Source: Hydrolagus colliei (taxonomy: Eukaryota). From it: a stretch of DNA of 64,000 nt. Below are positions 19,811 to 50,106 of this stretch, in pieces; position 1 is the stretch's first letter, and every line of letters starts with the position of its first letter. Location: assembly GCA_035084275.1 (NCBI GenBank), contig CM068756.1, positions 9,300,001 to 9,364,000 of the forward strand. The letters run 5' to 3'. Both the position numbers and the translations under genes were made by a program. The notes below the pieces were generated by a model that ran no database searches, was not told the origin of the DNA, and saw only the letters and a program-made list of their open reading frames with translations.

Positions 19811-19822
19811 AGAGTTGAAGTC
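19811..19822 (-). CDS. sowah: 12-nt coding microexon of Sowah (GAC TTC AAC TCT = DFNS)
   Basis: Minus strand reads tactaatcccttcacaatgtgctcctag|GACTTCAACTCT|gtaagta: perfect donor, branch point TACTAAT, in frame after ...ASKK. It supplies exactly the D-F-x-S/T that follows KR in intronless SOWAH paralogs (KRDFxxGFTALHW). Confidence 0.82.
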
Positions 19823-20569
19823 CTAGGAGCACATTGTGAAGGGATTAGTAGTTTTTCCACACACCATTGTGGAGACGGGTAGCAAGGAGGGAAACAGAAA
19901 AAAAAGAGAAAGGACAAGATGTAATTGATTTGGTTTAGTGGACAATGACTTGTGTATCATAGCAGGGTAAGTTAGGGGAGAAAACAAAAGACTTGGGCCA
20001 CCAAGGAGCAAAGTGCCTTTCTTACAAGAGGTGGCAGAAACGTAAATTCATCTATTACAATTTTTTTTAAAAAGAGGAATAAATCATAGGATGTCAAGAT
20101 TCAGCAGCAATTTCCTTTGTAGCTCTTCGTTTTTACATTTGCACTACAATCGCAGATTACCTGATTATTGATTTAACCTCTTAAGCACTGAGAGAGTTCA
20201 GAACATAGCTCATGCCTTGTGCCTCCAACTGACCCAGTCCCATTCTGCTTTCCGACCCAGTTAGAACACATTATATGGTAATTTTATGGCAGGGTCACAT
20301 CATTTTGTAATTGTATTAAATCAGCAATAACTAACTGAAACAATCTAATTACAAAAATTATTTTGCCTGAGGTTAACGTGCACAATTCTTCAAAACTCTT
20401 CCATGTTAAATGGAAGAGATTTAAGAACACAGAAGGTTAACCTCGAGTGCAACTTGAACCTGGAGTAATGTCCCACTAATATAATCAGGAGGCCAGTGAT
20501 ATAATGTCTGGTTTTGCAAGCATAGCCATGGAGGGTGAGAAAAATCATTATCTTAACAATACATAACGA

Positions 20570-21060
20570 TTCCTCAGTCCCCAAACAGAAAAGCAAGATG
20601 ATTTTCTGAAACTAACTACACAATCTGTCATAGCCAAAAGTAATCATCTTAAATAATCTGTCCGGTTAAACATCATTCCTCATGACATCTCCTCCTGTCA
20701 CCACTGTCATTTCTGTCAACCTCAGCTCTCAGATCTTTGTTGCTATCAAACTGTGGATCCTTTATAATCACTATTATCAACTGAGTAAACGGAATGTGAA
20801 AAGGTGCCCCTAATAGGTGAATGTATGATGTCATATCTTGAACTGAATGAGATAACATGCAAGGCAAACCTCTGGGTTAAGCAACGCGGTCAATTTTCTA
20901 GGCAGAGATAATGGATGATGACAGTCAGTCGCCATAGAGCAATAGGTTTGGAAAAGAAAATGTGTGCGTGCATGTAGAATTACGCCACAATGCACTTTGC
21001 AGCTCCAAACATTGTAATCACAGTTGGTGGTTATGCTGTGGAGAAAATCTGATGGCACAC
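20570..21060. promoter_or_regulatory. Candidate enhancer-like block upstream (gene-wise) of the microexon
   Basis: Dense TGTCA/TGACA repeats (e.g. cctgtcaccactgtcatttctgtcaac at 20694-20720), repeat-free. Function inferred. Confidence 0.4.
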
Positions 21061-45930: not shown

Positions 45931-48900
45931 TGTCCTCAGTTAATGTTCAAACACTTGCCATTTGCAGAAGGAGGTAATTGGCAAGCGATCATGAGCAGTC
46001 CCTGTTTTCCCCCTTTATATTCGAGACCAATTCTGGAATCCTTTCTCTGAGTGAAAGAGATCCACCTAATTCTGCACAGGAATAGGAATCAGACCTCCCT
46101 AGGTTTATAGTTCAATATTAAATACGTACAGTGCTGCAACATCAAACGATGAGGCTCCCCCAGCACTGCACTGTGTTGTGCTGAATCAGCAATTCACATC
46201 ACACTGTACACAATTCACAAGTTTGTACACAAACTTCTTGTTACGTCAACATAAAATGAGCAACAAGGAGAGAAGATGTTGAGATGTGTTGTGTTTGAGC
46301 AGCATCCATTCACAAGCCAAATACAGTGCAGGTTTGATCACCTGGCACACATGATCAAACATTAAAGGTCATTACATGTTCATGTTTTCATGATACAGTA
46401 CTGTATATAGAAATGTTTTGTACAGAATTGTCAAACGTCACTTTTCAGGCCACGGAAACATTAGATGTGAAGATTTAATGGGTAAATCTCGCTCCCACTT
46501 GTGAAACAAATCGATCAAGTGGAAGATGTGAGAGTAAGGTTTCGGCACATCTATATTAAAGCAGCGAACTATAATTAAGAAGGCTTGTCAGAGGAAAACA
46601 GTAAAATGCAGCAGAGTGAATAGAAAACATTATAGTAAACCAAGAGGAGACTGCTGCAATTCATCTGATGTAGTGAGTTTTTATTTCTATAGAAGGCTGT
46701 GTTTTAAGATCTTAAGTCTTGTGACCTTAAAACAAATAATTAAGCCTTTGAAAATACAAAAAAAAGTGAGTTCATTAGCTTTACTTCAACAATAACTACT
46801 CTACTGCCAAGCTTTCAGAGACAAGGCTGGCTTCCTTTTAAGTAATTGATGTAGACTTTCTTTAGTGGCTAGGCTAGACAACTGCTCAAACGTCAGTCAG
46901 GAAATCAGACCGTCAAAGGAAAACGGTGCATTCCTTTCACGTGGCCTGGGTCAGGCTAGCAATACACTGAATTTATGTTGCTTCTGTCAAGTGCTTACAT
47001 TGTCATGCCCTCCTGTTGCTTAGATAAAGAAAGTGTTCCTTCTACAATGTGAGGCTGTGTCAAATATAACTCCAGCTAAGTTTCTGACAAAATCTGCTCC
47101 TGTCTCCCTGAATTGAGCAAATGAATCTGCGTTTTACAGTTTGAAAGCTGAAGGGGTTATTGGATATCACCCGGGGAGCACAAAGCGAATACGTTCTCAA
47201 TTCTCGCTGACCTTGTGTGCATTTCCCTTGCAAACTGTCTAGGCCTTCAGCCTTCATTTCTCATTCTCTCTGTGGTAGCACAGGAAGGACAGCTCGGGCT
47301 TTCTGTCCAGGCCAAACAGATCGGGTTTTGTTAAAAAGCTTCTTTAACCAGAAACGGAAGGGAATACTGTGAGCAAACTGGAAACTGGCAGAGCTATAAC
47401 TTTTCATGGTCCACAACTCAATGTCAATATGCAAAAATTCTTCTTATTCCTGGCACAGTGGCTGACACTCAGTGCACTGTTACACATTTTCCCACAGTTA
47501 CTCTTATCCCATGTCCAAAGGTCAAAGGAAACAATTTTGGTTTTAAAAATACAAAAGAGGTCATCTGCAGAAGCAGAAGTCACTCAGTTTAAAAAGAGCA
47601 AAAGTATCCGAACAGTTTAAAGAAACAGAATCTCCATCTATTTGTGTAACTAAGGTGTACTTTACTAACTGCAGCAGAAGAAGAAATGTAAAGCTCATTG
47701 TTCTGGAAACCTCAATTCCCAACGTTGCTTTAAAACATTCTGCTCACTGTTTCCTGCACTTTTATTTCTTCTTACTATCAGAATACCTCATTGGTGTCTT
47801 CAATCCTAGATTTAATAGTCTGGAAGAATCTCCATCTCTGGAGATTTCTTTTAAAAAAACAAAAACAAAAATGACTGCTGATTTCCAAACTAAAACAATG
47901 ATTACAATTCACAACGCGAGACTCTCTGAGGGTTGGTAAATTTATGGGCGAGAACATCTTATTCTCCACTGGTCTGTAAATTTACAGACATTCGTGGTTG
48001 GAGTTTATAATGGTGGGGGGGGGAATCCCATTATTAGCTCTTGCTGCCAAGGTCTGTAAATTTAAAGATCAGCAGAGAATATGATTTGCTGGCCAAGATC
48101 TGCAGATTTGACAACCATTAGAGAATCATCTCTTTATAGTTCACACTTATATGTGTCTGTTTGCTTTCATTAAGAAGCTAGTTTGCATGTTATTCCCTTT
48201 TTTTTAAGTAAGGAAAGGGGTATCATATTGTTCAGGCATCAATCAACTTGACTGTTCCCACCTTGGGAAAGAGAACTTGTAGTCTTGGAAATGAAGTTAG
48301 GCTGCAGGGAAGCTGGAATTCTAGCAAACTGTGTTGAATCAGAATCTGCAGAAACGTTTAAAAATAATTAACGCTCCGTGGTAGAAATATAACTCAAACG
48401 ATTTTGACTGCAGCCAAGTTGCATACCTTCGAGTCAAAATGGATAAAATAGTCGTTTCTTCCTCACCAAGAAATATGATGTAATTGTCGGAGCCAAAATG
48501 TGAAGAAGGCTCCCGTGGAACCAAGTCTGGTGCAGTGTAACAAAAGAAACTAACATTATGATGTACCCAATAAAACTTTCCATTAAGGGATTAGGGAATT
48601 CTAAATCTTCAATTTAAGTTTGAAAAGGACTGGTCGGTTAAGCAGAGTGTTATAATAAGTAGCATTGATGCAGAAATTTCCAAACATGAGGCCATCATTG
48701 TGTGACCTTTCGTTGCTTTGTGTTGAGAAACACGATGCTTCCTGATCCCCAAAGAGGCAACTGGTCAATAATGTATTATTAATAACAGAGTAGCAAAGGT
48801 CAGGATCAAAAACAAGTTTAAGAACAGGCCAGGGCTCAGACTGAAGTGGATTAATTGTACAGCCTTTTCACAGCTATTTCAACGGTCAGCTAACTGGAAA

Positions 48901-50043
48901 GCCAACCAGTGTCAGGTTCACCATTTTCTTTTTGGTTAACCATTTTCTACTGCAACAAATCTTTGTCGGAGAAATTCCGCATGGATCGAGATCTACTCTA
49001 TGTAGCATTTTAGCGTGTCCAGAATTTGGGATTTTATTGAATTTAGTCTTAACTATGAAGTCAGTCTTCTATATTTTTTATTGGAACTTACAGAAAGCTA
49101 GCTTAAAATTAAGATGTACTGGAGAATTTTTTGCCAAATTCTGGATTCTCTAAAACACTACAAAGATTGAGTAAATTTCTACTTAGTGCAATTTCTCCCC
49201 ACTTGAACTTTCCCGTCCTTATATGTGATTTAAGATACATGATAATATGTAATGCATTAAAAAGTACTATTTCAATTAATTTCTTGAAATTGATTGTCAT
49301 TAAGAACTGGCTGCTGTAATATATTCTAAACTTGACAGCCTCATCAAACATTTCAGATAAAATACTCAGTGAACATTAGAAGTGTACTTTAATACAACAA
49401 GGAGTTAAATCTTGCAAACAAGCAAATATGTTTTATGAATGAGAAAAATCCAAAATTATACCATTTTACAAAAAAACAGGAAGCTTATTGATGAATACTT
49501 GAAACTGAATAGAAACATCTGAAAGCAAACTCCAGGAGATCAGAGGCTGGAATAAGTAAGTAGGCAGTTGATGGTTTCAACAAAAGTCAGTCAGAGCATT
49601 TTGTAAACTCTAAACTTTGTACTAATTATATAGTACAATATTATGACAATTAAGATTTTTGATTACTTGCTCTCAAGAATTACTCTGATAGTAAATTAGA
49701 TTAGAAGATATACCTTAAGTTGATTAGGAAGCTGTTTTCAAAATATAATGAATTGTAAATATTCATTTAATATTTGAAGTATTTTCTTGTCTCGATGGCT
49801 TCCTGAGTTAGGGGGTATGTTAATGCAACTGCAATTAGTTTAGTCTGTTTAGCAAATCTGCAAAGGCAGTTAAAGGAATAGTAGAAAATATGAATTTGTT
49901 GTGTATAAAGAAAACATCTTAGCAAATATCCACCAGAATATAACTGACTTGTTCAATACATAATCTAATATATATACCATTTTGATTTCTGTAATAATGT
50001 AACATTAAAATTATATCTTGAAAATGCCACAAATATGACTTAC

Positions 50044-50106
50044 ATTGACAGATGAAGTTGTAATACTTTGAAGGTCATCATCAGTTCCTTCTTGGTCAGT
50101 ATCACC
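50044..50106 (-). CDS. sowah: Internal coding exon (63 nt, phase 0/0) of intron-containing Sowah ankyrin-repeat gene: GDTDQEGTDDDLQSITTSSVN
   Basis: Minus strand reads tgtttgtttgtttcgtgcag|GGT GAT ACT...GTC AAT|gtaagt, a strong acceptor and consensus donor. It joins in frame to LDPLEHDW, reproducing the acidic linker plus S-V-x-L-D-P-x-E-H-x-W motif that precedes the ankyrin repeats in Sowah proteins. Confidence 0.85.

What the first reader, a model, noticed from the sequence alone, without database searches (positions are those of the whole stretch)
19811..50106. Hidden intron-containing Sowah gene: the window is probably inside an Iroquois-Sowah genomic regulatory block
Seen: three phase-0 minus-strand exons (63, 102 and 12 nt), missed by the ORF track, splice into a continuous Sowah peptide across introns of 15178 and 14941 nt. 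No further exon was found in the flanking 19.8 kb or 13.9 kb. Known: tetrapod SOWAHA-D are intronless retrogenes, whereas the ancestral intron-containing Sowah is linked to Irx clusters and its introns carry Irx enhancers (Maeso et al. 2012, Genome Research). Inference: this is that ancestral bystander gene, with only 177 coding nt in 64 kb, and an Irx cluster should lie nearby.
Basis: partly seen in the sequence, partly recalled or inferred. Interest (0 to 1): 0.8.

Follow-up and report, generated by a model that had tools for sequence, protein, structure and literature searches.

The report
Middle exons of intron-containing Sowah gene
The window lies inside a real but already known kind of gene, the intron-containing Sowah gene of a cartilaginous fish, whose few tiny exons are separated by 15-kb introns; one exon boundary needed correcting and its link to Iroquois genes could not be tested here.

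Summary
The three minus-strand exons exist and belong to a Sowah gene. Exon 1 (50106..50044) is 21 of 21 residues identical to Callorhinchus milii 'SOWAHC-like' LOC103176098. Exon 2 hits 56 Sowah-type fish proteins (best E 2.4e-15).

Corrections and additions:
- **Exon 2 boundary.** In spliced contigs of a close relative, 4 of 4 runs, exon 1 joins at 34886, not 34865. Exon 2 is therefore 123 nt, adds the conserved SLFQRLQ, and intron 1 is 15157 nt.
- **Microexon.** The 12-nt DFNS microexon is supported: its letters follow exon 2 in 2 of 4 runs, it is unique in the window, and it is present in C. milii isoform X2. It is alternatively skipped.
- **Possible circular RNA.** Contigs also run from exon 2 or the microexon back into an upstream exon. 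One contig's length fits a 324-nt circle, which suggests an in-frame circular RNA.

The Irx-block reading fits the literature and unchecked scan notes on neighbouring windows of this same genome. The gene and the block are already known, so interest is low to moderate.

The parts
50044..50106 (-). Sowah coding exon, 63 nt, phase 0-0 (GDTDQEGTDDDLQSITTSSVN)
   Evidence: gtgcag|...|gtaagt borders and translation. It is 21 of 21 identical to P0001/P0064 residues 194-214. Its last 30 letters follow exon 2 in contigs of 4 of 4 runs. The X4 contig of 186 letters equals 63+123 exactly.
   Evidence: Junction 50044/34886 is seen in contigs of 4 of 4 runs. Depth is zero in the intron bins 34912-35300 in all four runs. 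The intron holds a tRNA-Thr on the + strand.
34764..34886 (-). Sowah coding exon, 123 nt, phase 0-0 (SLFQRLQLDPLEHDWMCFAAMGNTAALTHLLLQDPALASKK).
   Evidence: cccag|...|gtaaga borders. Contigs fit 34764..34886 in 4 of 4 runs. phmmer gives 56 hits, best 2.4e-15, aligned over residues 1-41. Identity to P0064 residues 215-255 is 37/41. Pfam Ank_2 on P0064 starts at residue 232, inside this exon's homologue.
19823..34763 (-). intron of 14941 nt between exon 2 and the microexon; it contains the alternative 61-nt exon
   Evidence: In X2 and X3 the loose ends before 34763 carry the microexon's letters. Depth is zero in bins 34538-34741 in all four runs.
   Evidence: tblastn of P0001 residues 258-275 against 25049..24996 gives E 6.6e-5 and 16 of 18 identical. 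Borders are cacag|...|gtgaat. Translation is PCKYSSYMTGI*NRLVFKCL, with an in-frame TAG. In C. milii isoform X6 (P0001) this exon sits between exon 2 and the microexon, and the downstream exons are then read in the +1 frame. That last point is an inference from the protein.
19811..19822 (-). 12-nt microexon (DFNS), alternatively included
   Evidence: cctag|GACTTCAACTCT|gtaagt. It is the only copy of the 12-mer in the window, against 0.01 expected. Its letters follow exon 2 in loose ends of X2 and X3 and are absent in those of X1 and X4. DFNS is present in C. milii isoform X2 (P0064) and absent in P0002 and P0063. Of 85 homologues, 32 continue with DF.. and 17 go straight to TALHWAAK.

Best explanation
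The window is the middle of the intron-containing Sowah gene (SOWAHC-like, orthologue of Callorhinchus milii LOC103176098) of a cartilaginous fish close to C. milii, transcribed on the minus strand.

**Coding content.** In 64 kb the window carries only residues about 194-259 of a roughly 409-aa protein. This is the acidic/serine linker (exon 1), the conserved SLFQRLQLDPLE..W motif and first ankyrin-cap helices (exon 2), and a 12-nt microexon (DFNS) at the start of the first ankyrin repeat. All three exons are phase 0-0 and are separated by introns of 15.2 and 14.9 kb.

**Splicing, shown in a relative's spliced contigs and in C. milii models.** The microexon is included or skipped. The first ankyrin-repeat exon, which lies outside the window, can be skipped. 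A 61-nt exon at 25055..24995 shifts the frame, and in this genome brings a stop, giving an ankyrin-less or degraded product.

**Regulatory role, inferred and not shown here.** The huge introns exist because the gene is a bystander in the Iroquois regulatory block, as published for Sowah in other animals.
For: - **Exon sequences and borders:**
- **Homology:** exon 2 gives 56 hits, best 2.4e-15 at 90% identity to C. milii proteins. These are named SOWAHC-like, carry ankyrin repeats, and have precomputed PF25877.
- **Exon 1:** 21 of 21 identical to P0001.
- **Spliced contigs:** in 4 of 4 runs contigs cover 34764..34886, with zero depth in the flanking intron bins. They continue into exon 1 upstream. 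Downstream they continue into the microexon (X2, X3) or into the GYTALHIAA exon (X4).
- **Microexon:** the 12-mer is unique in the window.
- **Isoforms:** the alignment shows DFNS followed by GTALHWAAK in P0064.
- **Alternative exon:**
- **Literature passages on the Iroquois-Sowah block:**
Against: - The RNA evidence comes from a relative, about 5% diverged by word share. It is from contigs of runs whose RNA nature is a guess, all from one study. No RNA of the window's own organism was found.
- All four differences in exon 2 between window and relative appear to change the protein (M/I, C/R, F/Y and A/T), so relaxed constraint in this species is not excluded.
- The rest of the gene (start, wHTH domain, ankyrin repeats, stop) lies outside the window and was not seen.
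- Irx linkage and intronic enhancers were not tested.
Confidence: 0.9

Rival explanations
1. The exons are relics of a decaying (pseudogenised) parental Sowah gene in this species, kept only as spacers around regulatory DNA, as reported for tetrapods.
For: All four exon-2 differences from the relative change the protein, two of them in adjacent conserved positions. No RNA run of the window's own organism was found. The alternative 61-nt exon carries a stop here.
Against: All three exons keep open frames and canonical AG/GT borders. Exon 1 is 21 of 21 identical to C. milii. Exon 2 is 37/41 identical with 39/41 positives. The orthologue of the close relative is expressed and spliced. The position with C is variable in the family: R, K, H, Q and C all occur.
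Confidence: 0.07
2. The spliced contigs come from a processed (intronless) DNA copy of Sowah in the relative rather than from RNA, so they do not show that this locus is spliced.
For: The runs are labelled 'RNA?' as a guess, and contigs cannot show strand or level.
Against: At least three different continuations after exon 2 occur, sometimes in the same study: microexon in, microexon out, and straight to the GY exon. Some contigs also return to an upstream exon. One retrocopy would give one form. The unique intron sequence beside the exon has zero depth in all four runs, unlike a DNA run. C. milii gene models have the same alternatives.
Confidence: 0.03

Closest known systems
Callorhinchus milii LOC103176098, 'ankyrin repeat domain-containing protein SOWAHC-like' isoforms X2, X4 and X6 and XP_007887673.1 (P0064, P0063, P0001, P0002)
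   Same: Same exon content. Exon 1 is 21 of 21 identical and exon 2 is 37 of 41 identical. The DFNS microexon is in isoform X2, and the 61-nt extra exon is in isoform X6.
   Different: It is another species: about a fifth of sampled 31-letter words are shared with the relative's DNA. MCF replaces IRY and A replaces T in exon 2. The extra exon has an in-frame TAG here.
Iroquois-Sowah genomic regulatory block (Maeso et al. 2012, Genome Res 22:642; Irimia et al. 2008). The paper itself was not readable here and is known only from passages in other papers.
   Same: A multi-exon Sowah gene with very large introns in a non-tetrapod, as the block predicts.
   Different: Whether the 2012 paper already shows the elephant-shark exon structure could not be checked, because the paper and its supplements were not available.
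Tetrapod SOWAHA-D retrogenes
   Same: The LDPLE..W motif followed by DF..(G)(F)TALHWAAK ankyrin repeats.
   Different: Those genes are described as single-exon replacements away from Irx (passage). Here the same stretch is split by introns of 15 kb. The window's type carries S-L-F-Q-R-L-Q before the motif, which among the 85 proteins occurs only in fish sequences.
Neural-type alternative microexons and microexon-containing circular RNAs (PMC7697094 and PMC8355340, seen as search listings only)
   Same: A 12-nt phase-0 microexon that is in or out, and contigs that include it in a back-joined form.
   Different: No tissue data, no SRRM4 test and no RNase R test. The circle is inferred from contig ends and one contig length.

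Membership tests
Sowah (sosondowah) ankyrin-repeat protein family | Conserved motif ..LDPLE..W.. leading into the ankyrin repeats | tested here: met
   Exon 2 gives 56 hits at E<=1e-3, with the top hits named SOWAHC-like. Identity to P0064 is 37/41. The motif was found in 85 of 94 held proteins.
Sowah (sosondowah) ankyrin-repeat protein family | Two C-terminal ankyrin repeats (..TALHWAAK.., ..GYT.LH.AA..) | not testable with these tools
   These exons are not in the window (tblastn). They are present in the orthologue P0064 (Ank_2 at residues 232-322) and in the X4 contig (GYTALHIAA).
Sowah (sosondowah) ankyrin-repeat protein family | N-terminal SOWAHA-C winged-helix domain (PF25877) | not testable with these tools
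   It lies outside the window. It is listed as a precomputed Pfam hit for P0001, P0002, P0063 and P0064. My own hmmscan of P0064 at E<=0.01 did not list it.
Parental (intron-containing) Sowah, as opposed to a retrogene | Coding sequence interrupted by spliceosomal introns | tested here: met
   Introns of 15157 and 14941 nt have AG/GT borders. The junctions are seen in spliced contigs of a relative in 4 of 4 runs for exon 1/2 and 2 of 4 runs for exon 2/microexon.
Iroquois-Sowah genomic regulatory block | An Irx gene or cluster adjacent on the same chromosome | not testable with these tools
Only unchecked scan notes place Irx5 about 76 kb beyond the window end.
Iroquois-Sowah genomic regulatory block | Irx enhancers or conserved non-coding elements inside Sowah introns | not tested
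   No vertebrate genome was at hand for comparison. Note s1-901907 proposes one at 25160-25570 and is unchecked.
Exonic circular RNA | A back-splice junction (downstream donor joined to upstream acceptor) in RNA | tested here: inconclusive
   Loose ends after exon 2 (X1) or after the microexon (X2, X3) run through three G into letters that translate to KETKSEMNK. That peptide is P0001 residues 153-161, 41 residues before exon 1. The X3 contig length of 354 equals 324+30. The evidence is contigs only, one study, and the acceptor exon lies outside the window.

The most novel reading that the evidence does not exclude
A major stable product of this bystander gene in chimaeras may be a small exonic circular RNA of 324 nt, or 312 nt without the microexon. 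It would consist of four phase-0 exons plus a 12-nt and a 3-nt microexon, be in frame all round, have no stop codon, and contain internal ATGs. The same cluster of tiny alternative pieces (DFxx, G, F, GF) at the first ankyrin hairpin appears to be conserved across fish Sowah genes. If so, the 'bystander' gene has a regulated RNA output of its own.
Probability: 0.4. Interest if true: 0.5.

Novelty: already known. Interest (0 to 1): 0.3.

Why it matters
It confirms that a tool-less reading found real tiny exons, including a 12-nt microexon, in 64 kb of otherwise non-coding DNA, and it places the window inside a known ancient gene. The biology is published: an intron-containing Sowah kept beside Iroquois genes in non-tetrapods. 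The orthologue is also annotated in the elephant shark.

What this report adds:
- the corrected exon 2 boundary;
- a frame-shifting alternative exon;
- evidence that the microexon is alternative;
- a lead to a small in-frame circular RNA and a possible 3-nt exon.

These additions could interest people who study microexons and bystander genes.

Tried and rejected
- **Pfam on single exons:** 0 families for exon 1 and exon 2 at E<=10.
- **ESM Atlas on exon 2:** only weak ankyrin-like leads, best score 0.93 to unnamed clusters. I did not use this as evidence.
- **Loose-end strings in the window:** the two downstream loose-end strings give 0 matches at up to 3 mismatches. Peptide motifs KETKS, EMNK, TALH and LH.AA give no minus-strand hit of the right kind. 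Those exons therefore lie outside the window.
- **Chance copies of DFNS:** two other DFNS translations, at 28771..28760 (-) and 10302..10313 (+), are chance. Their DNA differs from the 12-mer seen in the contigs.
- **Other genes in the window:** the 5 ORFs of 130 aa or more have no Pfam family. There is one short tandem repeat. Rfam finds only a tRNA.
- **Protein of the back-joined form:** a search with P0007 (90 aa) scored only 5 candidates and returned 2 sturgeon proteins. This blank says nothing.
rejected. It is seen in 0 of 4 runs' listed contigs and would delete 7 conserved residues.
- **Papers:** Maeso et al. 2012 is not held by DOI or PMC id, and I saw no supplements. No held paper has both 'sowah' and 'microexon'. 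Of 22 papers holding 'sowah' and 'circRNA', the 10 listed are on human or bird topics by title and abstract start.
- **Joined model:** the spliced model was searched exon by exon only. The joined peptide was never built or searched.
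Full report
**1. The observation**

All three segments lie on the minus strand with canonical borders.

| Segment | Borders | Length | Translation |
|---|---|---|---|
| 50106..50044 | gtgcag / gtaagt | 63 nt | GDTDQEGTDDDLQSITTSSVN |
| 34865..34764 | tacag / gtaaga | 102 nt | LDPLEHDW...ASKK |
| 19822..19811 | cctag / gtaagt | 12 nt | DFNS |

The window has no N and an even G+C content of 0.35-0.39.

**2. Identity**

- The 41-residue version of exon 2 (window:34764-34886:-) was scored against 1.84 billion representatives. 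It gave 56 proteins at E<=1e-3, and 2 at E<=1e-10.
- The two best hits (90% identity over all 41 residues) are Callorhinchus milii proteins: XP_007887676.1 (LOC103176098 isoform X6, P0001) and XP_007887673.1 ('ankyrin repeat domain-containing protein SOWAHC-like', P0002).
- The other hits are fish proteins, many named SOWAHA, SOWAHB or SOWAHC.
- tblastn of 62 held proteins, and later 5 more, against the window found only three significant places. They are exon 1 (21 of 21 residues identical to P0001 194-214), exon 2, and a third place near 25 kb.
- Pfam places Ank_2 at residues 232-322 of the 409-aa isoform P0064. Exon 2 therefore encodes the conserved motif before the ankyrin domain and the start of that domain.
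- Pfam on the isolated exons found nothing.

**3. Transcript evidence**

The look-up of sequencing runs found no run on record as RNA. It listed four 'RNA?' runs (X1-X4) of organism A, all from one study. It also listed DNA runs of organism A holding 0.22 of the words, and one run of organism B holding 0.93. I read organism B as the likely source and organism A as a relative about 5% diverged. That reading is an inference.

I laid X1-X4 on window:34300-35300.

- In 4 of 4 runs one contig fits 34764..34886 with 4 differing letters. The unique intron bins on both sides (34538-34741 and 34912-35300) have zero depth, as expected for spliced RNA.
- Beyond 34886 every run continues with one and the same 30-letter string. 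It matches the window once, at 50044-50073, with 1 mismatch. This is the 3' end of exon 1.
- The junction is therefore 50044/34886, not 50044/34865. An AG sits at 34888-34887, and the 21 extra letters read SLFQRLQ in frame.
- These 7 residues are part of the family's conserved block.
- The X4 contig is 186 letters, exactly 63+123. This fits breaks at the outer borders of exons 1 and 2.
- Three listed differences (34834, 34838, 34839) turn the window's M-C-F into I-R-Y, the C. milii residues.

**4. What follows exon 2 in the contigs**

Loose ends before 34763 show three continuations.

- **X2 and X3:** the microexon's letters come next. The 12-mer occurs once in the window, at 19811-19822 (-), against 0.01 expected.
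- **X4:** the contig goes, after G residues, into letters that translate to GYTALHIAA, as in P0002. Here both the microexon and the first ankyrin-repeat exon are skipped.
- **X1:** the microexon is skipped.

C. milii isoform X2 (P0064) reads LASKKDFNSGTALHWAAK. It is not in the window.

Among 85 of 94 held proteins with the exon-2 motif, 32 continue with DF.. and 17 go directly to TALHWAAK. The letters between them vary: GF, F, G, VS or none. The microexon is thus an old, alternatively used feature of fish Sowah genes.

**5. A missed exon**

- P0001 residues 258-275 match 25049..24996 (16 of 18 identical, E 6.6e-5).
- With borders cacag|...|gtgaat the exon is 25055..24995, 61 nt.
- It shifts the frame, and in this genome it carries an in-frame TAG.
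- In P0001 the residues after it (RLQLW, then GLYSIAYSS) are what the microexon, three G and the GY exon give in the +1 frame (inference).
- This order agrees with the genomic order 34764 > 25055 > 19822.
- It behaves like a poison exon or an exon for a truncated product.

**6. A possible circular RNA**

- In X1, X2 and X3 the letters after exon 2 (X1) or after the microexon (X2, X3) are three G and then a string that translates to KETKSEMNK.
- That peptide is residues 153-161 of all four C. milii isoforms. It lies 41 residues before the first residue of exon 1, so it belongs to an upstream exon.
- The X3 contig is 354 letters: 187 before exon 2 and 43 after it.
- If the upstream part is that 123-nt exon, the sum is 123+63+123+12+3 = 324. 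Adding a 30-letter overlap (31-letter words) gives 354 exactly.
- This fits a 324-nt circle, or 312 nt without the microexon. All its parts are phase 0, so it would be in frame with no stop.
- It remains an inference from contig ends and one length, from one study.
- Exon repetition or a library artefact is not excluded.
- The acceptor exon is outside the window.
- The three G also explain the one-glycine difference between P0002 (375 aa) and P0063 (374 aa).
- They agree with an unchecked scan note of a 3-nt Gly exon before the window start.

**7. Surroundings**

- There are five ORFs of 130 aa or more, and none has a Pfam family.
- There is one short tandem repeat.
- There is one tRNA-Thr(TGT) at 41976-42049 (+).
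- The window is otherwise non-coding.

**8. The regulatory-block reading**

What I could read:
- Passages state that Iroquois and Sowah are linked across bilaterians. They also say the parental Sowah was lost in tetrapods and replaced by a retrogene, and that Iroquois cis-regulatory modules remain in its remnants (PMC5803294).
- Further passages are in PMC5585340 and PMC3342872.
- In Drosophila, sowah introns house ara/caup enhancers (PMC12311624).
- Amphioxus Irx-Sowah conserved elements are listed in PMC5010895.

What I could not read: Maeso et al. 2012 itself is not held, and supplements are closed. I cannot say whether the elephant-shark exon map is already printed there.

What I could not test:
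- Unchecked scan notes on this same genome place the first Sowah exon head-to-head with Irx5 about 76 kb beyond the window end, and further Sowah exons just before its start. These are leads, not evidence.
- The scan has therefore noted this same gene in neighbouring windows of the same genome, not on other DNA.

**9. Verdict**

- The gene identification is sound.
- The block interpretation is likely from the literature but untested here.
- The kind is already known and the orthologue is annotated.
- The circular RNA and the tiny-exon cluster are the only potentially new points.

Noticed in passing
window 41976-42049 (+): A tRNA-Thr (anticodon TGT) sits inside the 15-kb intron on the opposite strand: Rfam 56 bits against a gathering score of 29, also called by ARAGORN. 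Whether it is a working gene or the head of a tRNA-derived repeat was not checked.
   Followed up: partly
window 24995-25055 (-): A 61-nt frame-shifting alternative exon is shared with C. milii isoform X6 and carries a TAG here. It lies about 105 nt from 25160-25570, which another scan note calls an enhancer. Conservation there might partly reflect this exon's splicing signals.
   Followed up: partly
window 34300-34343 (also up to about 34537): This is a piece of a very abundant repeat. Dozens of contigs in each of the four runs end or start here, with summed depth up to 6597.
   Followed up: no
outside the window (contigs of runs X1-X4; proteins P0002 and P0063): Three G stand alone between exon 2 or the microexon and whatever follows, and two C. 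milii isoforms differ by exactly one glycine at that spot. This fits a 3-nt exon. The DNA lies before the window start and was not seen.
   Followed up: partly
outside the window (contigs of X1-X3): Contigs run from exon 2 or the microexon back into the exon that precedes exon 1 (KETKSEMNK). The X3 contig length of 354 equals 324+30, as for a 324-nt circle.
   Followed up: partly
window 34833-34841 (-): Three adjacent codons differ from the relative and from C. milii (M-C-F against I-R-Y). With A against T at the codon 34781-34779 (my placement, by counting from the exon's end), all four exon-2 differences appear to change the protein. The numbers are too small to call selection or decay.
   Followed up: no
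proteins P0081, P0082, P0085: Lizard and turtle 'SOWAHC-like' models, one of them an 'isoform X4', vary at the same tiny spot (F, GF, VS before TALHWAAK). This hints that some reptile Sowah genes may still have introns there. It was not examined.
   Followed up: no
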